From positions 186,001 through 250,000 of the IMG/VR virus record IMGVR_UViG_3300034072_002211: a DNA stretch of 64,000 bases; one strand, written 5' to 3'. The first letter of the stretch is position 1, and the number at the start of each line of letters is the position of its first letter. The notes beneath the pieces are model-generated. The model was not told the DNA's origin. It was given only the letters and a program-made list of their open reading frames with translations, and ran no database searches. Of this stretch, positions 5,577 to 45,001 are shown piece after piece. A program made the position numbers and the translations under genes.

Positions 5577-6026
5577 TCAAGCCGCAAGTTTGAGACAAAG
5601 GTCATCAAGTGACATTCTCTCCACGACCTTTGCGAAGTCCCTGTGGTAGATGACCTGCGTCTCACCCTTTCGGACTTTGTGATGGGGCACCTCAAGCACT
5701 ACCAGCATCATGGAATCATTGTGCTTCTCTGCGAGCATCTTCATGCGCGCTAGGCCCTCGAGGGGAAACCAAGCCTCCAGCTGCTCCAGAGACTCAAAGG
5801 CGCATTGCCAGGAACGGCGACCCGCGTCGGGCCAGCGACGCATCTCTTTGACAGTGAGGTGAAAGCCAGCCCAGAATCGAGCCAGCTTGTCATCACCGTC
5901 GGGACTGGGGTGGAGATCCTTCATCTGCGGATCGTTGTCGTTGAGGCTCTGCCGGGCGCACTTGAAACCAAAGCCCCGTGCGTAGCAGCCTTCGCCTTCT
6001 TCGTTCTCGAGCCGATAAATGAGCAA
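5577..6026 (-). CDS. hypothetical phage protein
   Basis: GGGAGG RBS, promoter element; C-terminus LKLAA. Confidence 0.75.
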   Translation of the reverse strand: MLIYRLENEEGEGCYARGFGFKCARQSLNDNDPQMKDLHPSPDGDDKLARFWAGFHLTVKEMRRWPDAGRRSWQCAFESLEQLEAWFPLEGLARMKMLAEKHNDSMMLVVLEVPHHKVRKGETQVIYHRDFAKVVERMSLDDLCLKLAA

Positions 6027-6040
6027 GCTGACCTCCCTCG

Positions 6041-6086
6041 TTACCAGTCCTGTTTAGCAGAACTGGTGAGGGAGTCAACCAGTTTT
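6041..6086 (-). promoter_or_regulatory. repeated early-promoter/hairpin element
   Basis: TTACCAGTCCTGTTTAGCAGAACTGGTGA (identical at 6745 and 7162) plus GTCAACCAGTTTT. Confidence 0.85.
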
Positions 6087-6489
6087 AGGCAGCCTGGAGG
6101 CGACCCGAGAGGTCGAGTCCGCGCCGATGCTCCTCGGAGATCAGGCCCTGCTCGACAGCCGCGTCCAGGATGATCTGATCCATGATCGGCTCGGTGACCT
6201 TGTGGATGCCGTTCCAGTCGGTGCGGCGAACACTGTGACGACCACGACCACCATACGTGAAAGCGCCGACGCTAATGCCGAAGATGCTCCGGATCAGCGG
6301 ACCGCGGTTACCGCCGCCATTGTTGTTGATGTCATAGTAGGCGTTCGAAGCCTGGCGGAACTTCTCGAGCTTCTTGTTGCGGCTGCGCGGCGACTCGACC
6401 GCACCTTCTGCGGGAATCAGCTTTTCCAGCTGGTCGGCGAGGGCCTGGTGGACGCCGTTGTTACCCCAGTAGGTCTTCATCTTTTCCAT
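6085..6489 (-). CDS. hypothetical phage protein
   Basis: AGGAGATCG RBS; C-terminus RLQAA. Confidence 0.8.
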   Translation of the reverse strand: MEKMKTYWGNNGVHQALADQLEKLIPAEGAVESPRSRNKKLEKFRQASNAYYDINNNGGGNRGPLIRSIFGISVGAFTYGGRGRHSVRRTDWNGIHKVTEPIMDQIILDAAVEQGLISEEHRRGLDLSGRLQAA

Positions 6490-6513
6490 TGCCGATCTCC
6501 TTGTTGCTTCCTA

Positions 6514-6556
6514 TTCACCAGTTCTAGCAGAACTGGTGAAGGTGTCAACCAGTTTT
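6514..6556 (-). promoter_or_regulatory. repeated early-promoter/hairpin element (perfect palindrome)
   Basis: TTCACCAGTTCT-AGC-AGAACTGGTGAA 12-bp perfect stem, then GTCAACCAGTTTT. Confidence 0.85.
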
Positions 6557-6726
6557 TAGTAGCTTTCCCGACGCGCGTTGCGAGCACCGGCCAGATAGGC
6601 TTCCTCCAGAGCTTTCTTGATCTGCCAGACCGACAGTTCGTGGAAGTCGAGCGAGTCGCTGTTGCGCGTCTCCAGCGTATCGAGTTCCAGGTGCTTCTGC
6701 GCGATCTCTGCCAGCGTCTCGTCCAT
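6556..6726 (-). CDS. DUF6900-like small protein (56 aa, not in ORF track)
   Basis: MDETLAEIAQKHLELDTLETRNSDSLDFHELSVWQIKKALEEAYLAG; GGAGATCG RBS. Confidence 0.75.
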   Translation of the reverse strand: MDETLAEIAQKHLELDTLETRNSDSLDFHELSVWQIKKALEEAYLAGARNARRESY

Positions 6727-6744
6727 GTTCCGATCTCCTCTTGC

Positions 6745-6790
6745 TTACCAGTCCTGTTTAGCAGAACTGGTGAAGCTGTCAACCAGTTTT
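6745..6790 (-). promoter_or_regulatory. repeated early-promoter/hairpin element
   Basis: 29-bp exact copy of the 6041 element plus GTCAACCAGTTTT. Confidence 0.85.
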
Positions 6791-7145
6791 AGAAAGGCAC
6801 CTTGTCGCAGTTTGCGATCGGCGCGCAAAGCGGCTCGCCGTCCTCAGCCGTGCCATAGACCAGCCCGTCGTCGATCTCTTCGACCTTGACCGTCTCGACC
6901 ACGCCCTTGGCATATTCCATGAGGACCATGTCGCCGACCTTGATCCGGCGACCTTCTGCGAGGATCAGCTGATCCTCGGCGATACGCTGCTCCACAATCC
7001 CGTCGATCACCTCGTTGGGCAGGCCGCGCATGTCGTTGGGTTCCACAGTGGCCATCTTGATGTCGATGACGGAGAGACCCAGCTTCTTTGCGAACTGCTG
7101 AACCAGCTTCGACTTAGCTGCCTTGAGGCGCGTTTCCAGGTCCAT
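6789..7145 (-). CDS. hypothetical phage protein
   Basis: start reassigned to MDLETR after AGGAGATCG. Confidence 0.8.
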   Translation of the reverse strand: MDLETRLKAAKSKLVQQFAKKLGLSVIDIKMATVEPNDMRGLPNEVIDGIVEQRIAEDQLILAEGRRIKVGDMVLMEYAKGVVETVKVEEIDDGLVYGTAEDGEPLCAPIANCDKVPF

Positions 7146-7161
7146 GTCGATCTCCTCGTTG

Positions 7162-7206
7162 TTACCAGTCCTGTTTAGCAGAACTGGTGAACACGTCAAC
7201 CAGTTT
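7162..7206 (-). promoter_or_regulatory. repeated early-promoter/hairpin element
   Basis: 29-bp exact copy plus GTCAACCAGTTT. Confidence 0.85.
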
Positions 7207-7456
7207 ATCGCTCGAAAATGTTACCACCGTTGCGATAGTAGGTCATCGTGCGGCTGCGCCGTCGCTTGTAGACATAGCAGGCTTCATAGAGCACGAGCAA
7301 GTCGCGCTGATGTTCCTTGATGCCCTTGCCCCTGGGGTAGCGGGCCATGAAGTCGTTGACCGCATGGTCGGTGCCATAGCCCGGACCCATATAGCCGGAG
7401 AAGCCCCGACGGCGTAGCACCGTCAAGGCTTCCTCCATGGTCATGTTGGTCTTCAC
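7205..7456 (-). CDS. hypothetical phage protein
   Basis: GTGA/ATGA-type overlap with upstream gene. Confidence 0.7.
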   Translation of the reverse strand: MKTNMTMEEALTVLRRRGFSGYMGPGYGTDHAVNDFMARYPRGKGIKEHQRDLLVLYEACYVYKRRRSRTMTYYRNGGNIFER

Positions 7457-7896
7457 CGGCGACGCTTTCCGGCGCCGAGGAAGCTGCCCAGCTCGCTCAT
7501 AAACACCTTGCTGGCATTCTGAGGGTCGTTCTTGATGGCGTCCTTGACCCGCCGCTCCATGGCGTCGGCCTCAGCCTGAATGTCGTCCCGATACATCTTC
7601 GCGTAGAAGTCCTTGTCCTCCTGGGACATTGCTTCTGCGGGGATGGGCTTTGCGCCGACCTCGACGTAACGGGTGCGCTTGCCGTGCGGGATGATCTTGA
7701 GGAAGCCGAACGCCGCAGTGGCTTCGATCAGCCGGACCGCGTTGGGGTTGCCGGTGCCGCTCGTGCCCCAGATCGCCGTGGTCGCTTCGGTCATCGTGAG
7801 CTGCTTCTTGCCGCGAATCTCCATGTAGTTCTCGACATGGGCTGCGGTGGAGGCCGCCTTCTGCGCTGCCTTGCTCATCTCGTTCCAGTTAGCCAT
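7453..7896 (-). CDS. hypothetical protein, possible winged-helix
   Basis: GGAGATCG RBS and promoter element. Confidence 0.8.
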   Translation of the reverse strand: MANWNEMSKAAQKAASTAAHVENYMEIRGKKQLTMTEATTAIWGTSGTGNPNAVRLIEATAAFGFLKIIPHGKRTRYVEVGAKPIPAEAMSQEDKDFYAKMYRDDIQAEADAMERRVKDAIKNDPQNASKVFMSELGSFLGAGKRRR

Positions 7897-7963
7897 CTGT
7901 CGATCTCCGTCTTCGTTTCCGATAAACTGGTGATAGCATCACACCAGAGTTCGTCAACCAGAA

Positions 7964-8059
7964 TTATGAACAAAAGATCAGAACATAGAGCATGATCGCC
8001 AGGGTGCCCAGGGAGAGCACCAGTCCCACGCAACCTGAGAATTCATCCTTGCGTTTCAC
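7964..8059 (-). CDS. 31-aa single-TM peptide (not in ORF track)
   Basis: VKRKDEFSGCVGLVLSLGTLAIMLYVLIFCS; GTGA-coupled to the upstream gene. Confidence 0.45.
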   Translation of the reverse strand: MKRKDEFSGCVGLVLSLGTLAIMLYVLIFCS

Positions 8060-8217
8060 AGGTTGGGCGCGTTGGGATCTTCGATGACGCAGATGGTCTT
8101 CTGCGCCCACGCGCATTCAGTCTTGGTCATCATCTTGGAAATGGAGGAGCCGATGGCACTGATACCCAGCACCGCCATCAGGGCCACACAAGCGAGCAGT
8201 AAAGCCTTCTCAATCAT
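8056..8217 (-). CDS. Flp/type IVb pilin-like protein (53 aa)
   Basis: MIEKALLLACVALMAVLGISAIGSSISKMM resembles the mature Flp (IEY.L..ALIAV....LG..I) pattern; GAGGAGG RBS. Confidence 0.55.
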   Translation of the reverse strand: MIEKALLLACVALMAVLGISAIGSSISKMMTKTECAWAQKTICVIEDPNAPNL

Positions 8218-8275
8218 GGGTTCCTCCTCTTCCGTTAATAGAAAGGTAACACCAGAAAAGGCTGAGTCAACCAGT

Positions 8276-8536
8276 TTATTCCTTGGGTTCTTCGCCCGGC
8301 TCAGGAGGAGTATTGATGTCCTTGAGGAGTTCGTCATAATCCTCAATGCCCAGAAACTTGTTTAGCGCGATGAGGTTCTCCACAAACTTGTGGAGATCAA
8401 CGTCTGTCGGGGAAGATTCCCTTGCCCACTCTAGGCAGCGAAGAAATAGAGGAATGGTCATCTCAACACGATCAGGCCCTTTGTTAGGCTGATCGGCCTC
8501 GAAGAGTTTCTTAATCGCGTCGATATGCTGTCTCAT
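8276..8536 (-). CDS. hypothetical protein
   Basis: ORF directly after TAAATAGG motif. Confidence 0.7.
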   Translation of the reverse strand: MRQHIDAIKKLFEADQPNKGPDRVEMTIPLFLRCLEWARESSPTDVDLHKFVENLIALNKFLGIEDYDELLKDINTPPEPGEEPKE

Positions 8537-8539
8537 GCC

Positions 8540-8547
8540 CCTATTTA
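8540..8547 (-). promoter_or_regulatory. putative late promoter TAAATAGG
   Basis: same intergenic 8-mer at 35675(-), 49649(+), 63309(-); resembles T4 late TATAAATA. Confidence 0.5.
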
Positions 8548-8868
8548 GTGGGCAATGTATTCAGTTTCTGGTTTGCCGTCGATGCGACGCCGTCCACTCT
8601 TGGGATGACGATGCCAATGATCGGGCTCGCCCTCAAAGCCCCTCTCCTTCCACTCAAGGAAGGCGTGCTCCACGAGTAGCTTGTCGTCCACGAAGCGCTC
8701 GTCGAAGCACCAGCGATCATCATAGCCCCAGGGACAATCCATGTGGCCCCTGATCATCGTCCAGTGGAACATGAGCCGATAGTAGGCGACATATTCCTCA
8801 CCGTCACAGATGAGCTCAACGTGCTTGTAATCACGCTTCAGCATCTCAAGGTGTTCTTGGCGGTTCAT
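8545..8868 (-). CDS. hypothetical phage protein
   Basis: 107 aa ORF, co-oriented. Confidence 0.7.
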   Translation of the reverse strand: MNRQEHLEMLKRDYKHVELICDGEEYVAYYRLMFHWTMIRGHMDCPWGYDDRWCFDERFVDDKLLVEHAFLEWKERGFEGEPDHWHRHPKSGRRRIDGKPETEYIAH

Positions 8869-8907
8869 GCCCGTCCACTTAAATCCAAAGTGGACGGGCG
8901 TCTAGCG

Positions 8908-9459
8908 TTACTTCTTACCCTGAGCTTTACGGACCGTGCCAATGCTCACATCGAATTCTCTGGCGATCTTTTCATCGCTGAGACCGCTTTCCAGCTTGCG
9001 CTTGCGAATTCGCCGGTAACGCTCTTCCTTCGCATATTGCTTAGGAGTGAGCTTCTTAGCTTTGGGTGAAGTAGAAGGCGTAGGGGCTGGAGTCGCTCGA
9101 CTGTCGATATCTGCCTGCGTGATCTCCCCTCCCGCGAACAAAGTGTCGAGAAGCTTTTGACCAGAAGTTTTGGAGGTCTTGGTGGGGATTGGCTTTGCGA
9201 TCACCGCTTGACTGGTCTTTGGGGCATGAGCGGCTTTGCTCAACATCCAGGGAGTCGTCCCTTCGGCTTTGTGCTGAACCCAGCGGGCCTTCAGGTAAGA
9301 CCCTTTGCCTCGCAAAGGGCGGTTGTGTTCCTTTACGATCTTGTAGATTCGAGAGCTGTTGAGACCAGTTGCGTCAGTAATTTCGCGGACAGGCTTATTT
9401 TCGTCCCACAGCTTAAGAACAAGAGTCTCAATTGAATTGTTCACAGTTGGTCTCCTCAA
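8908..9459 (-). CDS. double-HTH DNA-binding protein
   Basis: VREITDATGLNSSRIYKIV and SDEKIAREFDVSIGTVRK helix-turn-helix patterns; Lys-rich linker. Confidence 0.65.
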   Translation of the reverse strand: MRRPTVNNSIETLVLKLWDENKPVREITDATGLNSSRIYKIVKEHNRPLRGKGSYLKARWVQHKAEGTTPWMLSKAAHAPKTSQAVIAKPIPTKTSKTSGQKLLDTLFAGGEITQADIDSRATPAPTPSTSPKAKKLTPKQYAKEERYRRIRKRKLESGLSDEKIAREFDVSIGTVRKAQGKK

Positions 9460-9569
9460 AAAGCGCGCTGTTTAGCGCATTGTGCATGTTTAAGGGATGC
9501 TTGGTCGGGCGCCCCTGTGACACCTTTCTGCGCTCAGGTTTTACCCTCGTCAACCGAAAAAATCACAGG

Positions 9570-9601
9570 AAAGGCGGGACCGCAAAAGCAATCCCGCCTT
9601 T
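9570..9601. terminator. hairpin terminator (possibly bidirectional)
   Basis: AAAGGCGGGA...TCCCGCCTTT. Confidence 0.6.
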
Positions 9602-9721
9602 TGTTTGGTATCGGCGCCCGACCAAGGACAATACCAACTGTCCTTTCTAACTAACTCCAATTGGTAGTTTGTCAACAAGTTTGTGTGCGTTACTTTGTGG
9701 TTCTAACTATGCCTAGAACTG

Positions 9722-9793
9722 TGGTTAGAAGTATGGTTAGAAGTATGGTTAGAAGTATGGTTAGAAGTATGGTTAGAAGTATGGTTAGAAGTG
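9722..9793. repeat. 6 x 12-bp tandem repeat TGGTTAGAAGTA in an AT-rich non-coding region
   Basis: five exact copies plus a sixth ending in G. Confidence 0.95.
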
Positions 9794-10091
9794 TGTTTCT
9801 ACCTACTAGTCTATGGAGTGTAATAGGTAGGACAAGTTAGTAGTCTGCAACAGTGTGCCCACTACAGGCCCATGAAAGGCTTGGATTTTTCGGTGACTAG
9901 TTGTTCTCTAACTACCAAAGGTAGGGGCAGTCTTGTAGTGTTTTCTACCTAGTACACTTGTGTATTAGTTTGATAACACACAACTTCAATCTACAATGCT
10001 TTTTTGTGAAGTAGCAGTTGGACTCTTACCAAAGAAATCTCGAAGTCAGACTGCTAAGGTAGTCTGACTTGATGTAGTGTCTGAAGTGTAG

Positions 10092-10802
10092 TTAGAACCG
10101 CTTGGTAACTCCAAGAACAAGTTCAAGAGTAGGCGTGTCGCGAGTCAGACCCACGTTGGCATTGAGGTCGATTTCTACGTTTCGCGAGGCAGTCCACACG
10201 GTTGTGAAGTCTAGGCTGGCTTGTGTTTGCCCCGCGCTATGCTGCGCGAACACTTCAATGGTCCCGCCTATGGGTCCGTAGAGGGTCTGATTCACACCCA
10301 CAGCGCCACTGATCAAGGGAGTGGGCAACACGAATACCGTTGGGCTTGCGTAGAGCTGTGTAGAGGGCGACACATCATAGGTTGCGCCCAGCGCAACGCC
10401 TGCGCCCAAGCGGCCCTGAGAAGCGTTCTGAGAACCCGTAGGCAGCACAAGCATGGGCTGAACTGCTAGGCTCAGCTGATCATCCTTGATGTTGCGACGC
10501 AGGGCCAAACGCAGGTCGCCTTGCCCCACACGCGAACCCTTGCGGACCCAAGGGCTCAAGCCAACTTGGACTTCGGTGTTCTCGTTGAGACCAAGGCGAA
10601 CCACTGTGTCGCCAAGTAAGAGAGTGGAATCAGCATCGTCGAACCAATCAGTCAGGCTGACTTCAACTTGGACATGACCGGGATCAACAACACACGGTTG
10701 GATCGCACCACGATCAGGACAGAGCGGCTTGAGGTCCTGAGCCACGGCAGGACTGGAAAGCATCAAGGCAAGAAGGGCGAGCCTACTTACCAAAACGCTC
10801 AC
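10092..10802 (-). CDS. outer-membrane beta-barrel 'transporter' (MetA-pathway/phenol-degradation family-like)
   Basis: signal peptide, LCPDR...PCVVDPGHVQVE motif, alternating beta-strands, C-terminal Phe. Confidence 0.7.
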   Translation of the reverse strand: MSVLVSRLALLALMLSSPAVAQDLKPLCPDRGAIQPCVVDPGHVQVEVSLTDWFDDADSTLLLGDTVVRLGLNENTEVQVGLSPWVRKGSRVGQGDLRLALRRNIKDDQLSLAVQPMLVLPTGSQNASQGRLGAGVALGATYDVSPSTQLYASPTVFVLPTPLISGAVGVNQTLYGPIGGTIEVFAQHSAGQTQASLDFTTVWTASRNVEIDLNANVGLTRDTPTLELVLGVTKRF

Positions 10803-10903
10803 GCTTGGTAGGAGGCCTCGGTTTCTTCATAGCCATGATCAGAGTATCACTGGGAAACTCAAAGGTCATGACTACCTCAAGCCAGATGCCGAAGTCGCTT
10901 AAA

Positions 10904-11395
10904 TTATCGGTTTGGGTGGTTGTTTTCACGATCTACCAGTCCACGGAGCCTCTCGATGATTCGATCTGTCTCCGGATGCGGCTGGGCCTTGTTGTCCCGC
11001 TTGCCGCTGCCGAGATCGTAAAGCTCTCCCTCGGGAGCCAGACGTCTGAACTCGTATTGCATCCTGCGGCCCAGATTGTCATCTAAAATGAACACCAGGA
11101 TCTTGACATAGCCCCAGCGGTTCTCCTCCAGATAGCGGAGGTCGCTGCGGGGTAGGTAACCTTCCGGCGCATCAGCGAACGCGCTCGCGACATACTGATC
11201 GCGGGAATAGAACCGGTCGTCGAATTGGATGTGGGTGAGTTCTCGGTCTGGCGTAGCTGGAAGGGAAACCTTACCCGTCAGCCAGTTGCGCTTTTCCTTC
11301 CGCCCGGGAATGGTCTTGGTGAAGACCATTATCCCTTGGTTGATCGGCTCGCAATACGCTACGCCGCGGAAGTCCTTGAAGACTGCCCAACACAT
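10904..11395 (-). CDS. hypothetical phage protein
   Basis: GGAGG RBS, 163 aa. Confidence 0.75.
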   Translation of the reverse strand: MCWAVFKDFRGVAYCEPINQGIMVFTKTIPGRKEKRNWLTGKVSLPATPDRELTHIQFDDRFYSRDQYVASAFADAPEGYLPRSDLRYLEENRWGYVKILVFILDDNLGRRMQYEFRRLAPEGELYDLGSGKRDNKAQPHPETDRIIERLRGLVDRENNHPNR

Positions 11396-11455
11396 CGTTC
11401 AACCTCCCGAATTGTTGATACTATTGCCTAACACCAGAACCGTGTTAGTCTACCA

Positions 11456-12202
11456 TTATGCGGGGTAAACATAAAAGGAAAATCGCCCGCTGCCGCCACC
11501 GACCGTCCAAGTCTCGCCGAGGATTGCTTGCACCTGGTCGAGGATTGCCGTCTTTTCCTCGAAGAACTTAATCAAAGCATGGCGAGATTCCTCCAGCAAA
11601 GCCGGCGGAATATGGCGCGAGCTGTCGAAACCATTTGACTTGAGGAATTCATCCATTTCCTCGCAAGCTTCCTTATACTTGTCCAGAAACTTGAACCCAG
11701 GAACTCCGAGTACCTCAATTGCCAAGCGCTTAGTACCCGACTTGGCATTATGGACATCAAACGTCCAGCCCTGCTTCGCCGCGATCACCTCGAATTCCGA
11801 AAGCTTTTCCTCATTGCGGAGGCGCTTTGCAACGCGGGCGCGCTTGAAATAATTGGGGTCGGTAAGGACCGCATCCTGCTTCTCCTCGGGCCAGGCGAGG
11901 AAATCGGTGAGCTTGTGCTTGACACCGTGCAGCATCACCCAGTTCTGACCAGCACCATGGGAGCCGCTCTCATACTTGTGCCAGACCAGACCTTCCGCAT
12001 ACGCCTTAAAGGTCACGAACTTGCGACCACGGGCGCGGCCGATACCGTCCAGGGTGGTCAGTTCCATCTTCTGGAAAAAGAGCTTATTGCGCTTCAGGAT
12101 CTTGTAGAGCGCGCGGTGGTTGTCGGTCTGGCGTTCGAACTCGTGGTGAAGGATGTCACCAGCGCTGAGGATCTGCCCGTCGAACTTGCTGAACTTGCCC
12201 AT
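11456..12202 (-). CDS. hypothetical phage protein
   Basis: start reassigned to MGKFS after AGGAGATCG. Confidence 0.8.
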   Translation of the reverse strand: MGKFSKFDGQILSAGDILHHEFERQTDNHRALYKILKRNKLFFQKMELTTLDGIGRARGRKFVTFKAYAEGLVWHKYESGSHGAGQNWVMLHGVKHKLTDFLAWPEEKQDAVLTDPNYFKRARVAKRLRNEEKLSEFEVIAAKQGWTFDVHNAKSGTKRLAIEVLGVPGFKFLDKYKEACEEMDEFLKSNGFDSSRHIPPALLEESRHALIKFFEEKTAILDQVQAILGETWTVGGGSGRFSFYVYPA

Positions 12203-17307: not shown

Positions 17308-17347
17308 GTCCTGTTTAGCAGAACTGGTGAGGGTGTCAACCAGTTTT
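17308..17347 (-). promoter_or_regulatory. repeated early-promoter/hairpin element
   Basis: GTCCTGTTTAGCAGAACTGGTGA..GTCAACCAGTTTT. Confidence 0.8.
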
Positions 17348-19070
17348 AGGAGAAAAGATGCGGCTCCAAGAGGCATCCAACATGCCAGTGGCAGAACTCC
17401 TCCATGAGGGTGTCCTTCTCAAATCCCAGGTAGCTTGCGAACTCCTGGAAGCCCAGGTCGCAATGCCGGATCTTGATGTCAGTGTTCTTGAAGAAGCGCA
17501 CGTTGGCTTGCCAGATGATCCGGCTGATCTCAAGCTCTGCGGCCGCTGGGATCTTTGCGCGAGCGCGCAGGCTCACGTAGGGCGCAGCATAGGGAACGCG
17601 GGCCTTGGCTCCACTACCCAGGATAACGCTGAGCCCGCCATAGTCGGAGCCAACAATGAAGTCCCGGAGGTCCACCACGTCATAGTATTCAGTGCCCGCA
17701 TAGTCACCGAAGTCGCTGAGGATGACCTGATCGACGATCTTCACGCCTTGGGGCAAGAGATCCAAAGCTGAACGGATAGTACCGCCGGTCACCGTGTCAT
17801 CTTCGACCAGCACATATTCACCATCAGGAATGTTCTGCGCCTGCTCCTCGAGAAAAGGAAAACCCACGCGCTCAGCACGGAACTGTGGCTTCCGTTGGGC
17901 TTCACTGACTGCGAAGTAACGGGTGCTCTGAAACATCTCATCACCGGGGAAGAACGGATCCAGGCTGAGAGTTAGGCGGTCACCAACGACCTTCTCAGCT
18001 TGTGCGAGCTGTTCGCTCACTGGAATGAGGTGGACCTTGTTCTGATGGCCGAGACTTTTGAACACCTGTGCGATACCAAGTCGAACCGTGCTCTGGAGTT
18101 GGATCCTGCGCTTCTCGAGTTCGCTTTCATCAATGATGCTGTGCCAGCGACGAATCGCGAGGTTCTCTTCATTGCGGATCAGGTAGGGCAGTTCGCCCGT
18201 GTCCTGCTTGTCCCAGGTCAACAGGTAGTCGCGGACCTTGGTGTTCAGATGGTCATGATTGCCTTCGCGCGCCAACTTGCTCGAGATGTCGCTCCGCGGG
18301 ATCATGATCGACTGGCCGGGAAGAGCCTCACCAAAGCCTTCGTTATCGGAACCGTAGACGTAGAAGACCCGCAGATATTGACCAACATGGAACTTGAGGT
18401 ATTCCTGGAGCCGCATGACCACATCGGTGAAGTTGATCTCGGCGGGCATGTAACGGGCCGCCCAGGGGTCACAGTCCAGCCAGTTGCTCTCTTGCGTGGC
18501 CAGCTCAACCATCGAGCAACGATGCTCTGCGGGGATGGCAGCGGTGCCACCATACTTCTGCCCCACATAGCTGTCGTGACCGGGCGCAAAGTATCCACCC
18601 AGAACGCTGTAACCCTGATCTTCTGCGATCTTGCGCGCCTCGTCCATCATTGCGATGTGGCCGTTGTGGATGGGAGCCATGCCGCCCGTGGTCACTAGCA
18701 CAATGGGCTCACGGCTGCGATCGGACTTCAGCCATGCGATGAAATGCTTGCGGACCTTCTCCAGTGGAGTGGTCATGAAGACAGGATCCCAAGCCTTGTG
18801 CGACATCGCGAGCTGGGGCAAGCCGTCGTCGAAGAAGCCCGCGCGGTAGAGATCCTTGCTGTCCTGAGTCTTCTCATAAACCCGACGGTAGCAGGGATCC
18901 GCGAGAGCTTTCCAGGCATACCGCTGGGCGGTGCTCATGCCCTCCTCCAAAAGCCTACGGCCTGCGAGGTGGATGTCATTGTGTCCACTCAACGGTTCAA
19001 GCCCGAGGAGCTCATAGAGATTCTCCTTGGGACGATCCATTGTGATACCGCAGGCGTAGGTGTCTGTCAT
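17346..19070 (-). CDS. J-domain-like + NMN/NaMN adenylyltransferase + type I phosphoribosyltransferase fusion
   Basis: NLYELLGL...ALADPCYRRVYE; TGGMAPIHNGH (HxGH), FYVYGSD; VLVEDDTVTGGT PRPP-binding loop. Confidence 0.8.
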   Translation of the reverse strand: MTDTYACGITMDRPKENLYELLGLEPLSGHNDIHLAGRRLLEEGMSTAQRYAWKALADPCYRRVYEKTQDSKDLYRAGFFDDGLPQLAMSHKAWDPVFMTTPLEKVRKHFIAWLKSDRSREPIVLVTTGGMAPIHNGHIAMMDEARKIAEDQGYSVLGGYFAPGHDSYVGQKYGGTAAIPAEHRCSMVELATQESNWLDCDPWAARYMPAEINFTDVVMRLQEYLKFHVGQYLRVFYVYGSDNEGFGEALPGQSIMIPRSDISSKLAREGNHDHLNTKVRDYLLTWDKQDTGELPYLIRNEENLAIRRWHSIIDESELEKRRIQLQSTVRLGIAQVFKSLGHQNKVHLIPVSEQLAQAEKVVGDRLTLSLDPFFPGDEMFQSTRYFAVSEAQRKPQFRAERVGFPFLEEQAQNIPDGEYVLVEDDTVTGGTIRSALDLLPQGVKIVDQVILSDFGDYAGTEYYDVVDLRDFIVGSDYGGLSVILGSGAKARVPYAAPYVSLRARAKIPAAAELEISRIIWQANVRFFKNTDIKIRHCDLGFQEFASYLGFEKDTLMEEFCHWHVGCLLEPHLFS

Positions 19071-27725: not shown

Positions 27726-28505
27726 TTATGCCCTCTCGAATACGATATCAGTGCGGATGATGATCTTCTCCTTGTCCCACTCCTGAGAGCCCTGCTGGAA
27801 GGGCTCCCCATCGTGAAGCAGCCGATGGTCGAACAATAGCGCATGACCAGCGCGTGGCTTGTTGGCGAAGATGACTTCGTCATCGTGACCTGCTCGGTCC
27901 CAATCACTGAAGTCCATTTCGTCCATACGCTTGCCGACTTGTGGATCCCTGAGGAAGCGTGTGGCCCCATACTCGTTGGTCGTCAGGTAGATGACCAGGC
28001 TCATGAGGGTCCGCTGGGTCTCTGTCTTGGCATAGGTGCCATCATAGTGGGCGACCAGCTGTCCGCCATCCTCATAGCGGATAAAGCGCATCAGCGGATT
28101 GACGCCAATAGGCCGCCAGAGGCTGTGGTTGTCGTGGTCCGTGGGCGTGAATGGGTCACAGACTCGCACGTCGGGAAGGAAGGGCTTGAGGCGCCGCCAG
28201 AGGACGTCTGCGAAGGCTTCGTTGAAATTGCTCAGACGGAAGTTGCCGATCTGCTCATAGGGCTTGTTCGCGTAACCGTCCAGTCCTACCGCCTGCCATG
28301 CGTTGCGACGGAGCCCGTCGAGCAGAACGCTGACGATGCTCGGTGGGAGCAAGTTGCTCGCTGTGAAAGCCTTGGCACCATTCTCGAGGTCATGAGCCTT
28401 GTACGACCACACGGGATCGCAGAGGTAGTCGCCGCCGAAATACCCAGCAGAGATAATCTTGTTGGCGTAGTCCGAATAGTCGAAAGAGTTGACGAATCCG
28501 CTCAT
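27726..28505 (-). CDS. 2OG-Fe(II) oxygenase (prolyl-4-hydroxylase-like)
   Basis: RFIRY..G...AHYDG (HxD), distal LLHDG His, IIRTD Arg. Confidence 0.85.
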   Translation of the reverse strand: MSGFVNSFDYSDYANKIISAGYFGGDYLCDPVWSYKAHDLENGAKAFTASNLLPPSIVSVLLDGLRRNAWQAVGLDGYANKPYEQIGNFRLSNFNEAFADVLWRRLKPFLPDVRVCDPFTPTDHDNHSLWRPIGVNPLMRFIRYEDGGQLVAHYDGTYAKTETQRTLMSLVIYLTTNEYGATRFLRDPQVGKRMDEMDFSDWDRAGHDDEVIFANKPRAGHALLFDHRLLHDGEPFQQGSQEWDKEKIIIRTDIVFERA

Positions 28506-29500
28506 GCTGCCCTCCAGGCCGGGTTATCCCAACCACCCTTAACACCAGCTTGCATGACGTCAAGATGGACAGCGGGCGACCGCCCCAGATACTTGTGCGC
28601 GTTGTAGCGATGCATCCGCTCCAAGTTGCCCACGTATTCGTCATATTGACGATAGTCATCCTCGCTGCCCTTTTCGTCGAGGATTTGATCGACCATGATG
28701 CGGGCATTGGTATGCCACTTCATGTGCGTGAACAACTCCACGAAATCGTAGGGCGCACCGAAGACGACCTCATCCGTGGTCGCGTCGAACATATCACCCG
28801 TGGGCGCACGTTCCAGCACCTCGCGCGGCACGCCGAGGAACTCGCCGATCGCATAGACCTCGGACTTGAACATATCGCTGATCAGCTGGAGATCGACCAT
28901 ACCGTCGCTGGCCTTGCCGAAATAACCCAGGTAACCACCCTCGCTGAGGTTGGTCGTGCCGATGACCAGGCCGGGCTGACCCTGACCGGCCAGGACGCTG
29001 GTGATGTAATAATAGGTCGGAGTGCGGGCGTAGCTGGTGACCTGTCCGCGGCACCAGTAATACTTCTCCTCGACCGCCGATCCCAGCACGGCCTCCACGC
29101 TGTTGATGATTGCCTCGCTGATCGGGGAGATGTCGATCTCCAGCGGGTTGACTGCGAATGCCTCGCAGACTTGCTTGGCCAGATTGGCCGCCTTGGTCTG
29201 CCCCGTTACGCCGAGGTTGGTGTGATCAGGCATGGTGACTGCCACGATACGCTCGATAGGCGAACCCGGTTCCTGCTGAGCCCGTGCGACCAGACCGAGA
29301 ACCACAGCACTGTCGATGCCGCCGGAAACCGCGACCACTGCGCTCTTGAGCCCGCTCTGTCTGTAATAGTCGTTGAGCAGCTTGACCTTGGCCTCAACGA
29401 CTCGCTCTACGTTGAAGCCTCGCTGAAGCCGACACATCTCAAGGGCCTCCTTGAGTGGCTGAGACATCTGCATGTTCGTTGCGTGATTACGAATTTCCAT
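28502..29500 (-). CDS. nadE: NH3-dependent NAD+ synthetase
   Basis: VAVSGGIDSAVV PP-loop, GTTNLSEG..GYFGK.SDG, DMFKSEVY..GEFLGVP...L.RAPT. Confidence 0.9.
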   Translation of the reverse strand: MEIRNHATNMQMSQPLKEALEMCRLQRGFNVERVVEAKVKLLNDYYRQSGLKSAVVAVSGGIDSAVVLGLVARAQQEPGSPIERIVAVTMPDHTNLGVTGQTKAANLAKQVCEAFAVNPLEIDISPISEAIINSVEAVLGSAVEEKYYWCRGQVTSYARTPTYYYITSVLAGQGQPGLVIGTTNLSEGGYLGYFGKASDGMVDLQLISDMFKSEVYAIGEFLGVPREVLERAPTGDMFDATTDEVVFGAPYDFVELFTHMKWHTNARIMVDQILDEKGSEDDYRQYDEYVGNLERMHRYNAHKYLGRSPAVHLDVMQAGVKGGWDNPAWRAA

Positions 29501-29511
29501 GTTGCTATTCC

Positions 29512-29718
29512 TTAGCAGGTGGACTGGAGGACGACCGAACCATCTGCCCGTTCGCAAAGGACGACGCTGACCATGTGAGCCTGGCTCTTGCGCGGCTTGA
29601 AATGCTCGGTAGCCTTGACCTTGGCCTGGTAAAGCGATGAAGCGTAGAGCTCAATCTGCTTGCCGTTGAAAAAACCCATGTAACCGCAGTCGCCGGGGGT
29701 CTTTTCGTTAATTGTCAT
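29512..29718 (-). CDS. small phage protein
   Basis: AGGAGATCG RBS and promoter element. Confidence 0.75.
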   Translation of the reverse strand: MTINEKTPGDCGYMGFFNGKQIELYASSLYQAKVKATEHFKPRKSQAHMVSVVLCERADGSVVLQSTC

Positions 29719-39634: not shown

Positions 39635-41329
39635 CTAAGCGTCAACCTGTTCGTATTGACGTAACAGCGCAATGGTGTTTCTGAGCCCGTAAGCCACTGT
39701 GAAAGCACCGAAACGTGGCCCATCGCTTGAACCCAAGAGACATTCGTAGAGAGCTTGGAACCATGACCGCAACGGCTCAAACTCATGCTTCTTGCCGACC
39801 TCATAGACCTGATACTGATAATGCTCGGCGGTCATGTTTTCGAGCATCAGAGAGAAACGGGTCGCAAGCTCACTGAATGCTGCCCGCTCCTTCTCGGTGG
39901 GTTCTCGGCGAGAACGCTCAAACAGCCCCTTGTCGGTTGCGTAGGCGATGACCTTGGGAGCCATTTCCCGCGCATAAGCCGCGGTCGCGTCGGCGAACTC
40001 ACGACCCTGCATCAAGTAAGCGAGCAGGTTCTCTGGCTGCTTGGCCTGAGCCACAACAGCCAAGTTGAGCATGAGTCCATGGGAGATGTCAGAGCTCAGT
40101 GGCTCAGGCAATTCCACGCGGAAGTGCCACGTGGCGTCATCGGGCGTCGTCTCAGCCTTCTGCCGCAACTTGACATACTGGTCTTCCAGCTGGGGCACGA
40201 TCTCTCTGTAGAGCTTCTTTGCCGCGCGTGGGTTCTGAAACATGAACAGCATCAGGGAGCCAGTCGACCCATAGGTCAACCACTGCTCGACCGTAAAGCC
40301 GTTGCCCTTGCTCTTGCTGATCTTTGCGCCGTTTTCGTCCAGGAACAGTTCATAGGTCAGGTTGAGCGGAGGGGTTCCGCCGAGGATCCGACAGATCTGG
40401 TTGGAAGCCTTGACGCTGTCAATGAGGTCCTTGCCAGACATCTCATAGTCCACGTCAAAGTAGACCCAGCGCATCGCCCAGTCGACCTTCCACTGAAGCT
40501 TGGCATTGCCGTTGTGGCTCATCTGGCCACAGTGCTCACCGTCGTCCGTGACCCAGCCGATGTATCCACGTGCGCCAGTTGCCTCGGCCTTGACCTGCAG
40601 AACAGGGCCCTTGCCACACCAACGCGGCATAAACGGACTGTAGGTCGCCTTGCGATCATCCCCCAGCGTGGCGAGCATGATCTCCTGAATCTTGTCGAAG
40701 TTGTCCCAGACGCGGTTCAGCATCTCGTTGAACTTGCCGGACTTGTAATAGCGCGAGGAGCTCACAAAGCTCACAGTGCTGCGGTCGGGCGATGCTCCCA
40801 CTTGGCCGCCATTGTAGTCCTTGAGGATGCGATCCACAAACTCGCAGAGCTTGTCGTTGTTGGCTTCGGCAAAGGTCATGGGATCAACCATGACTTGCGT
40901 GACACCCGGATCGTTGGAATAGGGCGAAGGAACCTCACTGAGCGGCAGGCCCAGATACTCGTTCATCCACTCGGGCATGTCGTCAGGGACCTTACGCATT
41001 GCGTCATAGTCATCCGAGAACATGATCAGACGGGTCTTGTAGGCGTTCTGCGTGAGCTCATTGAAAGCGCGCATCACCCAGAGGGTGCGGACCACCTCAC
41101 CAAAGGTGCCGATATGCGGAGCGCCCGAGGGACCATAGCCGGTCTCAAAGGTCACCACATCACCAGGCTTCTTGCCCTTCTTCTCGATATGAGCGAGAAG
41201 GCTGCGGGCCTCCTGGAAGGGCCAAGACTTTGCCTGGTCGAAAATGGTAGCCTCCTTTGCCTGCTCTGCTTTGATGGCACGGATCCGCTCGATGAGGGCT
41301 TCCTCTTCCCAGCGGTTCATCATAGCCAT
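39635..41329 (-). CDS. lysS: class I lysyl-tRNA synthetase
   Basis: TGYGPSG.PHIGT, KLQWKVDWAMRW, EMSGKDL, KISKSKGN, GPRFG. Confidence 0.95.
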   Translation of the reverse strand: MAMMNRWEEEALIERIRAIKAEQAKEATIFDQAKSWPFQEARSLLAHIEKKGKKPGDVVTFETGYGPSGAPHIGTFGEVVRTLWVMRAFNELTQNAYKTRLIMFSDDYDAMRKVPDDMPEWMNEYLGLPLSEVPSPYSNDPGVTQVMVDPMTFAEANNDKLCEFVDRILKDYNGGQVGASPDRSTVSFVSSSRYYKSGKFNEMLNRVWDNFDKIQEIMLATLGDDRKATYSPFMPRWCGKGPVLQVKAEATGARGYIGWVTDDGEHCGQMSHNGNAKLQWKVDWAMRWVYFDVDYEMSGKDLIDSVKASNQICRILGGTPPLNLTYELFLDENGAKISKSKGNGFTVEQWLTYGSTGSLMLFMFQNPRAAKKLYREIVPQLEDQYVKLRQKAETTPDDATWHFRVELPEPLSSDISHGLMLNLAVVAQAKQPENLLAYLMQGREFADATAAYAREMAPKVIAYATDKGLFERSRREPTEKERAAFSELATRFSLMLENMTAEHYQYQVYEVGKKHEFEPLRSWFQALYECLLGSSDGPRFGAFTVAYGLRNTIALLRQYEQVDA

Positions 41330-42750: not shown

Positions 42751-43683
42751 ATGCTCGTTGCACCAAAGCAACTCGACACTAGCAAAGACATAAAGATGAA
42801 AGGAGGAAAGATCCTCCTGGTTTCTGGTGATGTCTTGACCCCTAGTCTAAGCTTCACGGATGATCCGTCGACTGGCTTCTACAAAACGTCGTCTGTTGCT
42901 TTGGGATATGCTTATCAAGGGAACAGCATTCTAAGCATTGGAACCAACGGGGTCACCAGTGGTTCGTTCAGCGGCTCACTGAGTGGTAATGCTTCCACTT
43001 CAACCAAGTTGGCCACTCCTCGGACCCTAACTTGGTCTGGTGATGCGAGTGGATCACTGACCTTCGATGGTTCAGCAAATGCTACCGCTACCCTTACTTT
43101 GGCTAATTCTGGCGTGGCCGCTGGCACATATTCTACCGTCACTGTAGATGCTAAGGGACGGGTCACTGGCGGCTCAAAGTCTGCCTATCGTTCCTCAATT
43201 TTATTTGCTGGTAACTTCTTCTCTCCCAACAATACAGATTGGGTTTGTCCCAATCTGGCTCCTGCTAGTGCGGATCCGGCCTCTCCTTCTTTGAACGTGA
43301 GAGCATTTGATGACACCATGGAGACAGGTGTTGGATTCTACCAATATATCCCACCACTGGCTACCACGCTGACGTTGGTCATCAAGGCTCGTCCTACAAC
43401 CAATCCTAGTAGTTCTACCAAGTCAGTTATGCGCCTCTATCATAGAGCAATTCCGGATGGCACGGCCATGCCAGCGTGGTCTGCTCCTATTCAGCTAACT
43501 GACTTGAGCTTCCCGTCTGGCGTGAATTATTATAAGACCTTCACCCAGACAATATCATTGGCTTCAGGCGGATGGGCCCCAGGGAACACCTATTTGTTTG
43601 AACTAACTCGTTTTGGCAGTTCAACAGCTGATACTTTGCTGGGAGATCTTTTGATCATTGAAGTTCAGGCTATTTGGTCATGA
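42751..43683 (+). CDS. tail fibre / receptor-binding protein
   Basis: LSGNASTSTKLATPRT..SGDASGS..FDGSAN and SGVAAGTYSTVTVDAKGRVT fibre motifs; low GC. Confidence 0.8.
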   Translation: MLVAPKQLDTSKDIKMKGGKILLVSGDVLTPSLSFTDDPSTGFYKTSSVALGYAYQGNSILSIGTNGVTSGSFSGSLSGNASTSTKLATPRTLTWSGDASGSLTFDGSANATATLTLANSGVAAGTYSTVTVDAKGRVTGGSKSAYRSSILFAGNFFSPNNTDWVCPNLAPASADPASPSLNVRAFDDTMETGVGFYQYIPPLATTLTLVIKARPTTNPSSSTKSVMRLYHRAIPDGTAMPAWSAPIQLTDLSFPSGVNYYKTFTQTISLASGGWAPGNTYLFELTRFGSSTADTLLGDLLIIEVQAIWS

Positions 43684-44962: not shown

Positions 44963-45001
44963 CTGTCAATAAATATGGCTGGATCCTAATGGAGAACAGC
45001 C

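What the first reader, a model, noticed from the sequence alone, without database searches (positions are those of the whole stretch)
7964..8217. Phage-encoded Flp-pilin-like protein plus a coupled TM peptide
Seen in sequence: a 53-aa protein MIEKALLLACVALMAVLGISAIGSSISKMMTK... with its own RBS and promoter element, followed by a GTGA-coupled 31-aa TM peptide. Established knowledge: mature Flp pilins read ..IEY.L..ALIAV.......LG..I, and Tad/Cpa pili are receptors for alphaproteobacterial phages such as phiCbK. This protein lacks the prepilin leader and has K in place of Y. Inference: a dominant-negative pilin mimic that blocks the pilus for superinfection exclusion.
Basis: partly seen in the sequence, partly recalled or inferred. 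Interest (0 to 1): 0.6.

Follow-up and report, generated by a model that had tools for sequence, protein, structure and literature searches.

The report
Leaderless Flp-pilin look-alike in jumbo phage
A giant uncultured phage carries an early gene for a 53-residue membrane helix that is a true relative of the mature Flp/Tad pilin but has no leader peptide and lacks the tyrosine needed for pilus assembly. It most likely interferes with the host's Tad pili, although that effect is untested.

Summary
The 53-aa ORF (window 8217..8056, minus strand) is a real gene under purifying selection, with its own promoter and AGGAGG ribosome-binding site. It belongs to a family of at least 28 clusters (50% identity), found here only on phage-like contigs.

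Its kinship to mature Flp pilin is borderline for this protein alone (Pfam Flp_Fap E 0.049). It is solid for the family:
- A profile search of PDB returns only the two Tad pilins (E about 5e-5; next hit E 4.1).
- 23 of 36 members hit Flp_Fap.
- hhalign against 78 Flp prepilins gives 96% probability, and none of 400 column shuffles comes near the native score.
- The family profile picks out the Flp gene in 5 of 5 whole bacterial genomes.

The register puts phage Glu3 on pilin Glu5. No member has a credible leader, Tyr6 is always Lys or Arg, and a C-x7-C loop has been added. It is therefore not a prepilin.

The 31-aa GTGA-coupled ORF is really there and looks coding by codon usage. It is missing from all four close relatives examined, so it is not a conserved partner.

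The pilus-blocking function is inference. It is backed by published work showing that the N-terminal 17 residues of mature PilA alone cut ΦCbK susceptibility. The host is unknown.

The parts
8056..8217 (-). 53-aa gene (P0001), stop included. It is a leaderless homologue of the mature Flp/Tad pilin: M-I-E-K, a hydrophobic helix (AF2 helix residues 2-37), then a C35-x7-C43 loop and a polar tail.
   Evidence: Translation. Family. Flp kinship. Purifying selection. Model. Cys spacing is 8 in 35 of 36 members.
8223..8228 (-). Shine-Dalgarno AGGAGG, 5 nt upstream of the ATG.
   Evidence: Read directly from the sequence. GAGGAG or GGAGG sits at the same place in relatives L002, L008 and L010.
8243..8274 (-). 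Promoter-like element: CTGGTTGACT (-35 TTGACT at 8270-8265), 16-nt spacer, TGT plus TACCTT (extended -10-like, 8248-8243).
   Evidence: Sequence. There are 41 exact CTGGTTGAC copies in the record, all on the minus strand, 25 of them in the window. The consensus is AaaCTGGTTGAC-N11-TtcTGcTA, with a start codon mostly 56-67 nt downstream. The same architecture precedes the gene in L002, L008 and L010. Promoter activity is inferred, not shown; the generic scanner did not call it.
7964..8059 (-). 31-aa ORF (P0002), stop included. GTG start in a GTGA overlap with the upstream stop. The product is KRK followed by a 22-residue hydrophobic stretch. It is specific to this lineage.
   Evidence: Translation. 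Absent from L002, L008, L009 and L010, where the stop codon is followed directly by the next promoter. In-frame codon-usage score is 0.154, against -0.83 +/- 0.42 for off-frame windows; the other five frames are negative. No Pfam, PHROG or NCBIfam hit. No second copy in G000 and none in Phosso. Too short for the word search.
7953..7961 (-). CTGGTTGAC of the next gene's promoter copy (for the 147-aa ORF 7453-7896). It marks the end of the transcription unit's coding part.

Best explanation
The 53-aa gene encodes a phage-specific, leaderless derivative of the mature Flp (type IVc/Tad) pilin.

Shown:
- It is a real, selected gene with its own promoter-like element.
- It lies in a roughly 55-kb block of small, individually promoted genes in a ~468-kb jumbo phage.
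- Its residues 2-38 are homologous, in register, to residues 4-40 of mature Tad pilins.
- It keeps the pilin Glu5 (here Glu3) and the hydrophobic core helix.
- It lacks the leader with its Gly(-1) cleavage site and mature residues 1-2.
- The assembly-critical Tyr6 is replaced by Lys/Arg in every member.
- It has gained an invariant C-x7-C loop.

Inferred:
- It inserts into the inner membrane without prepilin-peptidase processing, in the pilin orientation (N-in, with the Cys loop disulfide-bonded in the periplasm).
- There it poses as a mature pilin towards the host's Tad system, in one of two ways. (a) It enters or caps the assembly site but cannot propagate the Glu5/Tyr6 contacts, so it poisons pilus extension. 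(b) It imitates the membrane pool of retracted pilin that sensor kinases such as PleC read, switching piliation off.
- Either route removes functional Tad pili soon after infection. That would exclude pilus-dependent phages and keep progeny from adsorbing to infected cells.

The adjoining 31-aa ORF is probably a real small membrane peptide of this lineage, but it is not a required partner.
For: Gene reality: family; dN/dS 0.06-0.33; codon usage.

Homology to mature Flp:
- Pfam Flp_Fap is the only recurrent family: 8 of 11 members, then 23 of 36, best E 1.5e-7.
- The family profile against 177,635 PDB sequences returns 8u1k_A PilA (E 4.5e-5) and 8u2b_A Flp pilin (E 5.4e-5), both as query 2-39 to chain 4-41. 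The next hit has E 4.1.
- hhalign against 78 Flp prepilins gives probability 95.9%, P 5.9e-9.
- Native score is 41.6, against 9.7 +/- 2.2 for column shuffles and 12.0 +/- 2.5 for shuffles within the helix. None of 400 shuffles reaches it.
- The close subset and the remote subset each show the match on their own: 75.7% and 96.0%.
- Reciprocal test: the family profile's best hit in 5 of 5 whole bacterial genomes is their Flp gene.

Found only on phage-like contigs:
- Contexts are ~470-480 kb jumbo-phage contigs and ~48 kb siphovirus-like contigs.
- None turned up in 401 Pseudomonadota genomes or in the pattern scan of species-representative genomes.

Motif: E then K/R in 36 of 36 members, against A-T-A-I-E-Y-G-L-I in the 77 distinct mature Flp sequences collected (invariant except position 1: A in 73, V in 4).

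From the literature:
- Glu and Tyr of the Flp motif are needed for assembly but not for processing, and they make the inter-subunit contacts (PMC11067988; PMC10710030).
- The first 17 residues of mature PilA are enough to signal through PleC TM1. As a synthetic peptide they lower ΦCbK susceptibility by 77% and attachment by 71% (PMC7196804).

Early-type expression is inferred from the repeated TTGAC / extended -10 element.
Against: - No experiment has been done and the host is unidentified, so it is not known that the host has Tad pili or that any relevant phage uses them.
- Topology is not settled. The N-flank is net neutral (E-K), the ten residues after the helix are on average slightly positive, and the tail is acidic.
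- A leaderless PilA(15-59) expressed in Caulobacter did not complement, which the authors attribute to lack of translocation (PMC7196804). Leaderless insertion cannot be taken for granted.
- The family profile found no member in Sinorhizobium phage Phosso or in five cultured relatives of the 48-kb phages, two of them Stenotrophomonas phages (DLP_1, AXL_3) that I recall, from my own knowledge, as type IV pilus-dependent. tblastn with two single members found nothing in the deposited-phage collection.
- The best-conserved part among the close relatives is the non-Flp C-terminal loop. The real target could therefore be something other than the pilus.
- P0001 on its own is below Pfam's threshold (13.9 against 32.2 bits).
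Confidence: 0.45

Rival explanations
1. It is a generic small phage membrane protein, such as an injection blocker like T4 Imm, a holin or antiholin-like modulator, or a membrane-perturbing peptide. It descends from a Flp pilin, but its present target has nothing to do with pili.
For: Among the close relatives, the most conserved segment is the non-Flp C-terminal part (S27...T33-E34-C35-A36...C43...P48), not the helix. No tad or prepilin-peptidase genes are present in the 277 kb held. Neighbouring genes differ between relatives, as expected of a free-standing moron. It sits among many small early genes of unknown function.
Against: The Glu at the pilin Glu5 position is invariant in 36 of 36 members, and the order-specific match to the Flp helix has been kept across clusters down to 24-35% identity. 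A mere membrane anchor would be free to drift away from the Flp pattern.
Confidence: 0.27
2. It is a working (minor) pilin. The host Tad machine polymerises it or places it at the tip or base of the host pilus, changing the pilus surface or function to the phage's benefit rather than blocking assembly.
For: It is homologous to the whole mature pilin helix, with length and predicted architecture (one long helix plus a short tail) like the 45-residue Tad pilin. Glu5 is retained. One member (P0022) starts M-S-T-L-E, so its Glu is at position 5.
Against: Tyr6 is replaced in all members, and residues 1-2 (including Thr2) are missing. The structures describe these as the polar contacts that hold Tad subunits in register and as required for assembly. 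There is no leader, so no prepilin-peptidase step.
Confidence: 0.1
3. The Flp resemblance is convergence between hydrophobic helices and the protein is unrelated to pilins.
For: Only about 37 columns align. Identity to any one Flp is about 19%. P0001 alone is sub-threshold in Pfam and reaches only 26% in hhalign. Weak Flp_Fap hits at E <= 10 occur in 8 of 14 control genomes. Foldseek gives nothing, as expected for a single helix.
Against: Shuffling the same columns, even within the helix alone, never gets near the native score (0 of 400, about 12 SD). The reversed alignment scores 16 against 42. Of all membrane helices in PDB only the Tad pilins are hit. Two disjoint subsets of the family both find Flp. 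The register is always the same.
Confidence: 0.08
4. For the 31-aa ORF only: it is not a gene but an open frame that happens to lie in a lineage-specific insertion.
For: It is absent from every close relative examined. It has no SD of its own and a GTG start. No homologue or family hit was found. About 23% of random 31-codon stretches are stop-free ((61/64)^31, my own calculation).
Against: The insertion is filled exactly by the ORF, from the upstream stop to the next promoter. Its codon usage is gene-like in this frame only. The product has the KRK-plus-hydrophobic-helix shape of an N-in membrane peptide.
Confidence: 0.35

Closest known systems
Flp/Fap type IVc (Tad) major pilins: Pfam PF04964; Caulobacter PilA (PDB 8U1K); Flp pilin (PDB 8U2B/8UCR)
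   Same: Homologous over mature residues 4-40. It shares the Ile-Glu start of the Flp motif, the hydrophobic alpha-1 helix, the small-residue (G/S) patch that follows it, the overall size and the one-long-helix architecture.
   Different: It has no leader and no Gly(-1) cleavage site, and mature residues 1-2 are missing. Tyr6 is Lys/Arg and Gly7 is mostly Ala. A C-x7-C loop is added. It is not in a tad locus, and it was found here only on phage-like contigs.
CIP peptide: the first 17 residues of mature Caulobacter PilA (Del Medico et al. 2020, PMC7196804)
   Same: It is a leaderless piece of the mature Flp helix that acts in trans. CIP binds PleC TM1, lowers ΦCbK susceptibility by 77% and lowers attachment by 71%. 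The phage protein covers the same helix.
   Different: CIP is a synthetic fragment added from outside, with the native A-T-A-I-E-Y start. The phage protein is genetically encoded, starts two residues later, has K/R in place of Y, and carries an extra periplasmic loop. Whether it signals through any kinase is unknown.
Phage proteins that disable type IV pili for superinfection exclusion: D3112 Gp05 (Tip) and DMS3 Aqs1 acting on PilB; Pf4 pVII (given in the literature also as PfsE, from my own knowledge) acting on PilC/PilJ (review PMC11436027)
   Same: Small phage-encoded proteins that remove the pilus receptor from the infected or lysogenic cell. This is the biological role proposed here.
   Different: Those proteins are not described as pilin homologues. 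They bind the ATPase or platform of type IVa pili in Pseudomonas. The protein here is derived from the pilin itself and relates to the Tad (IVc) system. No sequence similarity to them emerged from the Pfam or PHROG scans.
T4 Imm and Sp: small early membrane proteins of a large lytic phage that exclude superinfecting phage (own knowledge)
   Same: Small early-expressed membrane proteins of a large virulent phage.
   Different: No sequence relation was found, and they act on DNA injection and lysozyme rather than on pili.

Membership tests
Flp/Fap prepilin (PF04964, type IVc pilin) | Scores above Pfam's gathering threshold (32.2 bits) | tested here: not met
   P0001 scores 13.9 bits, E 0.049. 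Across the family, 23 of 36 members hit at E <= 1, best 1.5e-7. The homology is real, but the model's threshold is not reached by the window's protein.
Flp/Fap prepilin (PF04964, type IVc pilin) | N-terminal leader ending in Gly(-1), cleaved by the TadV/CpaA prepilin peptidase | tested here: not met
   The protein starts M-I-E. The match begins at profile position 10 of 46 and at mature residue 4. No member has a credible leader; the three called proteins with extra N-terminal residues look like mis-called starts.
Flp/Fap prepilin (PF04964, type IVc pilin) | Flp motif with Glu5-Tyr6 (A-T-A-I-E-Y-G-L-I) | tested here: not met
   Glu is kept in 36 of 36 members. Tyr is replaced by Lys (28) or Arg (8). 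Gly7 is Ala in 26 of 36. The 77 reference Flp sequences are invariant at positions 2-9 of A-T-A-I-E-Y-G-L-I; position 1 is A in 73 and V in 4.
Flp/Fap prepilin (PF04964, type IVc pilin) | Hydrophobic alpha-1 helix of mature pilin, about 45-50 residues in all, single-helix fold | tested here: met
   hhalign gives 96% over 37 columns. PDB Tad pilins are hit at E about 5e-5. AF2 predicts a helix over residues 2-37 with mean pLDDT 79.
Flp/Fap prepilin (PF04964, type IVc pilin) | Encoded in or with a tad/cpa locus (prepilin peptidase, TadA/CpaF ATPase, platform proteins) | tested here: not met
   No Peptidase_A24 match and no T2SSE match above its cut-off in the 277 kb held. Neighbours are small phage ORFs. 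About 190 kb of the 468-kb genome was not available.
Flp/Fap prepilin (PF04964, type IVc pilin) | Polymerises into a Tad pilus | not testable with these tools
   Needs pilus purification from an expressing host.
Phage pilus-blocking superinfection-exclusion proteins (Tip, Aqs1, Pf4 pVII/PfsE type) | Phage-encoded small protein expressed in the infected cell or lysogen | tested here: met
   Phage context. Own promoter-like element and RBS.
Phage pilus-blocking superinfection-exclusion proteins (Tip, Aqs1, Pf4 pVII/PfsE type) | Binds a pilus-machine component, abolishes piliation and blocks adsorption of pilus-dependent phage | not testable with these tools
   The one complex prediction (P0001 with three mature Flp of Rhizobium sp. 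Root274) gave no verdict.
CIP-like pilin-pool signal (PilA to PleC) | Contains the first 17 residues of the mature Flp helix in the membrane | tested here: inconclusive
   Residues 4-40 are matched, but residues 1-3 are absent or replaced and Tyr6 is changed. Which CIP residues matter is not known from the paper passages read.

The most novel reading that the evidence does not exclude
Phages of at least two unrelated types (~470-kb jumbo phages and ~48-kb siphovirus-like phages) have captured the host's own Flp pilin and stripped its leader. They have turned it into a self-inserting decoy of the mature pilin that hijacks the pilin-pool sensing pathway (PleC/c-di-GMP-type surface sensing). The decoy would not merely block the receptor but also reprogram the host's cell cycle or surface-sensing state for phage replication, while shutting off pili. 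This would be the first pilin-derived viral effector, and a natural counterpart of the synthetic CIP peptide.
Probability: 0.15. Interest if true: 0.85.

Novelty: new variant of a known kind. Interest (0 to 1): 0.62.

Why it matters
Phage proteins that strip type IV pili from infected cells are known, but the described ones act on the pilus motor or platform of type IVa pili and are not described as pilin relatives. A pilin-derived, leaderless decoy aimed at Tad (type IVc) pili would be a new way of doing this.

It would also define a family of roughly 50-residue proteins seen here only on phage-like contigs that current annotation leaves as hypothetical. It offers natural, genetically encodable versions of the CIP-type peptides proposed as anti-adhesion tools. 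The conserved differences from real pilins (no residues 1-2, Tyr6 to Lys/Arg, added disulfide loop) give direct hypotheses about which contacts drive Tad pilus assembly and pilin sensing.

If the pilus link is wrong, what remains is a well-supported case of a phage domesticating a host pilin helix as a small membrane protein.

Tried and rejected
- Megablast of window 6000-12000 against deposited phages found no match.
- tblastn of P0001 and P0025 against deposited phages found no match even at E 10. The low-complexity filter and short length limit this test.
- Pattern scans for the close family found nothing confirmed in viral contigs, genome contigs or metagenome contigs. The 36-member alignment was too diverse for that tool.
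- The family profile found nothing in Sinorhizobium phage Phosso, nor in Variovorax VPv64, Pseudomonas PSASB_03, Sulfitobacter M39, Stenotrophomonas DLP_1 and AXL_3.
- I looked for a conserved neighbour. The 107-aa genes upstream in jumbo and 48-kb phages share a length but are unrelated. Downstream genes are unrelated too. The two-gene module idea is rejected.
- Lipoprotein reading of 'LLLAC': rejected. The Cys is not conserved (P0004, P0006 and others lack it) and the would-be signal peptide is only 9 residues.
- An upstream in-frame TTG start (96-aa ORF) as a hidden leader: rejected. It would run through the promoter and the SD, it ends in E-E-E-E-P rather than Gly, and most relatives are called from the same Met.
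- Foldseek against PDB with the AF2 model gave no match, as expected for a lone helix.
- NCBIfam gave nothing relevant.
- ESM Atlas gave leads only, including 'putative Flp family type IVb pilin' at 0.84, below the level that counts. Nothing came back for the 31-aa peptide.
- The 31-aa peptide is too short for the search for homologous proteins.
- Complex prediction of P0001 with three copies of a mature Rhizobium Flp gave no verdict (score 0.13 against a mark of 0.34). This is evidence neither for nor against binding.
No expression data or habitat could be obtained, and read laying was not used.
- Host assignment is unresolved. Two other window proteins gave no consistent cultured relative.

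Full report
**What is in the sequence.**

Both ORFs lie on the minus strand.

The 53-aa ORF:
- It runs from ATG 8217 to its last sense codon at 8061-8059, with stop TGA at 8058-8056.
- AGGAGG (8228-8223) sits 5 nt before the ATG.
- Upstream lies CTGGTTGACT (8274-8265), then a 16-nt spacer, then TGT-TACCTT (ending at 8243).

The upstream element is one of 41 exact CTGGTTGAC copies in the virus record. All 41 are on this strand and 25 lie in the window. The consensus is AaaCTGGTTGAC-N11-TtcTGcTA, and a start codon behind GGAGATCG follows mostly 56-67 nt downstream. The gene therefore sits in a dense block of small genes that each have their own sigma-70-like promoter. I read that as an early region. 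This is an inference: the generic promoter scanner did not call the site.

The 31-aa ORF starts at GTG 8059-8057, overlapping the upstream stop as GTGA. It ends at TAA 7966-7964, immediately before the next promoter copy.

**The replicon.**

The window is bases 186001-250000 of a 277-kb IMG/VR record labelled 'provirus'. However, the identical protein is on record on a 468,011-bp contig, and close relatives sit on contigs of 470,746 and 480,938 bp. I take this to be a ~470-kb jumbo phage and the provirus label to be a trimming artefact.

The block carries phage helicase, NAD-synthetase-like and tail-fibre-like genes. No deposited phage is close. The best helicase hit is the 469-kb Sinorhizobium phage Phosso at 34% identity. 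Two other window proteins gave no consistent relative. The host is therefore not established.

A class I lysyl-tRNA synthetase in the window is 47% identical to that of a Caulobacter genome and 44% to a Bradyrhizobium one. It was not found in a Rhizobium, a Variovorax or a Paraburkholderia genome. That is a weak alphaproteobacterial hint.

**The 53-aa ORF is a real gene and a family.**

- The word search found 10 relatives at 54-75% identity.
- The exhaustive profile search found 28 clusters at E <= 0.001, mostly 47-58 residues long and starting at the same Met.
- dN/dS against three relatives is 0.06-0.33.
- Codon usage is gene-like in this frame only.
- The family signature is M-x-E-[KR]-[AG]-L-L, a hydrophobic stretch, then C-x7-C-[IVL] and a mostly acidic tail. 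Glu is invariant and the Cys spacing is 8 in 35 of 36 members.
- Members occur on the ~470-480 kb phage contigs and also on ~48-kb contigs. The terminase and primase of the latter resemble siphoviruses of Variovorax, Pseudomonas, Stenotrophomonas and Sulfitobacter.
- No member was found in 401 sampled Pseudomonadota genomes. The single hit below 1e-6 is an ordinary Flp prepilin with a leader.
- Neighbouring genes are not conserved, so the gene travels alone.

**Is it Flp-like?**

For P0001 alone the answer is only borderline: Pfam Flp_Fap E 0.049, 13.9 bits against a 32.2-bit threshold, residues 1-33 on profile positions 10-42. Weak hits of this kind are common in whole genomes.

The family-level evidence is strong and consistent.

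- Flp_Fap is the only Pfam family hit repeatedly: 8 of 11 close members and 23 of 36 overall, best E 1.5e-7. No other family is hit by more than 3 members.
- As the profile grows, the PDB search sharpens. PilA 8u1k_A goes from E 0.41 (4 sequences) to 0.017 (11) to 4.5e-5 (36), and Flp pilin 8u2b_A reaches 5.4e-5. The next hit stays at E 4.1. The alignment is always query 2-38 (or 2-39) to mature chain 4-40 (or 4-41).
- I collected 78 alphaproteobacterial and other Flp prepilins, starting from the pSymA Flp gene. hhalign of the family against them gives 95.9% probability and P 5.9e-9 over 37 columns.
- Controls: the reversed alignment scores 16. Two hundred shuffles of all columns give 9.7 +/- 2.2 (maximum 19.2). 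Two hundred shuffles confined to the hydrophobic helix give 12.0 +/- 2.5 (maximum 22.3). The native score is 41.6. Composition alone does not explain the match.
- The 11 close members alone (75.7%) and the 20 remote members alone (96.0%) each find Flp. Profile drift is therefore not the cause.
- Reciprocal test: the family profile run over five whole bacterial genomes puts their Flp genes on top in all five (the places coincide with loci L045, L051, L058, L081 and L097).
- AlphaFold2 predicts one helix over residues 2-37 and a coil over 38-53, mean pLDDT 79. This is the Tad-pilin architecture. Foldseek cannot score a lone helix.

**How it differs from a pilin.**

The register maps phage M1-I2-E3-K4-A5-L6-L7 onto mature pilin A3-I4-E5-Y6-G7-L8-I9.

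- The 77 distinct mature Flp sequences in my set read A-T-A-I-E-Y-G-L-I and are invariant from position 2 to 9; position 1 is A in 73 and V in 4. The phage family has K (28) or R (8) for Tyr6, and mostly Ala for Gly7.
- There is no leader and no Gly(-1), and mature residues 1-2 are missing.
- The two cryo-EM studies place Thr2, Glu5 and Tyr6 at the inter-subunit contacts in the pilus core. They note that Glu and Tyr are needed for assembly but not for processing (PMC11067988; PMC10710030).
- The C-x7-C loop has no counterpart in Flp. Among the close relatives it is the best-conserved part of the protein.
- The 277 kb held has no Peptidase_A24 match and no T2SSE match above its cut-off.

On these tests it is a relative of Flp but not a member of the prepilin family.

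**Mechanism.**

Shown: homology, leaderlessness, the conserved substitutions, phage-restricted distribution, and purifying selection.

Inferred: the protein inserts N-in/C-out like a pilin (the invariant Cys pair suggests a periplasmic disulfide) and presents a mature-pilin-like helix to the Tad system.

Two versions fit.
- A poison or cap subunit that docks but cannot continue the Glu5/Tyr6/Thr2 contacts.
- A mimic of the membrane pilin pool.

The second version has direct precedent. The first 17 residues of mature PilA suffice to signal via PleC TM1. As a synthetic peptide they reduce ΦCbK susceptibility by 77% and attachment by 71% (PMC7196804).

The same paper gives a caution. Leaderless PilA(15-59) expressed inside the cell did not complement, which the authors attribute to its not being translocated across the membrane. 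The phage protein must therefore have a leader-independent insertion route.

Charge distribution does not settle the topology. I put 0.45 on 'acts on the Tad system as a pilin mimic'. Kinship to Flp itself I rate at about 0.9.

**The 31-aa ORF.**

It is present and GTGA-coupled, as described. Its product has a KRK head and a 22-residue hydrophobic tail. Its codon usage is gene-like in this frame alone: 0.154 per codon, a value reached by only 0.18% of off-frame windows, and the other five frames are negative.

In relatives L002, L008, L009 and L010 the stop codon of the 53-aa gene is followed directly by the next promoter. The ~93 bp that hold the ORF are simply absent there. Other relatives have unrelated genes downstream. 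No homologue could be found, and the ORF is too short for the word search.

It is probably a real lineage-specific small membrane peptide (about 0.6-0.65), but it is not a conserved partner of the Flp-like protein.

**Comparison with what is known.**

Known phage proteins that remove type IV pili are D3112 Gp05/Tip and DMS3 Aqs1 acting on PilB, and Pf4 pVII acting on PilC/PilJ. They are not described as pilin homologues and act on type IVa systems (PMC11436027). My paper searches found no report of a phage-encoded Flp-like protein. That is absence in the library searched, not proof of novelty.

I class the finding as a new variant of a known kind: pilus-directed host manipulation by phage, and a new derived branch of the Flp superfamily.

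**Limits.**

- The single complex prediction returned no verdict.
- The host is unknown.
They passed, and I did not repeat it.

Noticed in passing
window 375-46962, minus strand (25 copies); G000 169.5-268 kb (41 copies): A repeated promoter-like element, AaaCTGGTTGAC-N11-TtcTGcTA, followed mostly 56-67 nt later by GGAGATCG and a start codon. All copies are on one strand. Many carry TCACCAG just after the -35, which is an inverted repeat of CTGGTGA and could be an operator.
   Followed up: partly
whole record G000 (window = G000 186001-250000): The record is labelled a 277-kb 'provirus', but the same protein is on record on a 468,011-bp contig. Relatives sit on contigs of 470,746, 480,938 and 958,096 bp; the last is about twice the genome size and may be a concatemer. 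This looks like a clade of ~470-kb jumbo phages, with the provirus call a trimming artefact.
   Followed up: partly
window 39635-41329, minus strand: A phage-encoded class I lysyl-tRNA synthetase (PF01921, 315 bits). It is 47% identical to a Caulobacter sp. gene and 44% to a Bradyrhizobium one, and was not found in Rhizobium, Variovorax or Paraburkholderia genomes. The only deposited-phage hit is the archaeal virus HGTV-1.
   Followed up: partly
window 9696-9795: A tandem repeat of a 12-nt unit, TAGAAGTATGGT, 6.6 copies at 97% match, in an intergenic-looking stretch downstream of the HTH gene 8908-9459.
   Followed up: no
window 42751-45538, plus strand: A low-GC island (0.485-0.49, against about 0.56 elsewhere) on the opposite strand. 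It carries a tail-fibre/Ig-like PHROG match, a Laminin_G_3 lectin-fold protein and a DUF4376 protein. It may be a receptor-binding or decoration module of different origin.
   Followed up: no
window 8908-9459, minus strand: A 183-aa protein with two helix-turn-helix regions (HTH_23 at residues 14-46; HTH_7/sigma-70 region 4-like at 143-179), two genes upstream of the Flp-like gene. It is a candidate regulator.
   Followed up: no
window 28502-29557 and 17346-19070, minus strand: Auxiliary metabolic genes: an NAD-synthetase-like protein (phrog_11189) and a 574-aa protein with a cytidylyltransferase-like domain.
   Followed up: no
L020 8001-8156, L021 8001-8153, L022 223-375: Remote family members lie in ~48-kb siphovirus-like contigs, placed after the replication module. 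Their start overlaps the stop of the preceding gene (in L020 and L021 an unrelated 107-aa gene). The terminase is 63-69% identical to those of Variovorax, Pseudomonas and Stenotrophomonas phages, including Stenotrophomonas phage AXL_3.
   Followed up: partly
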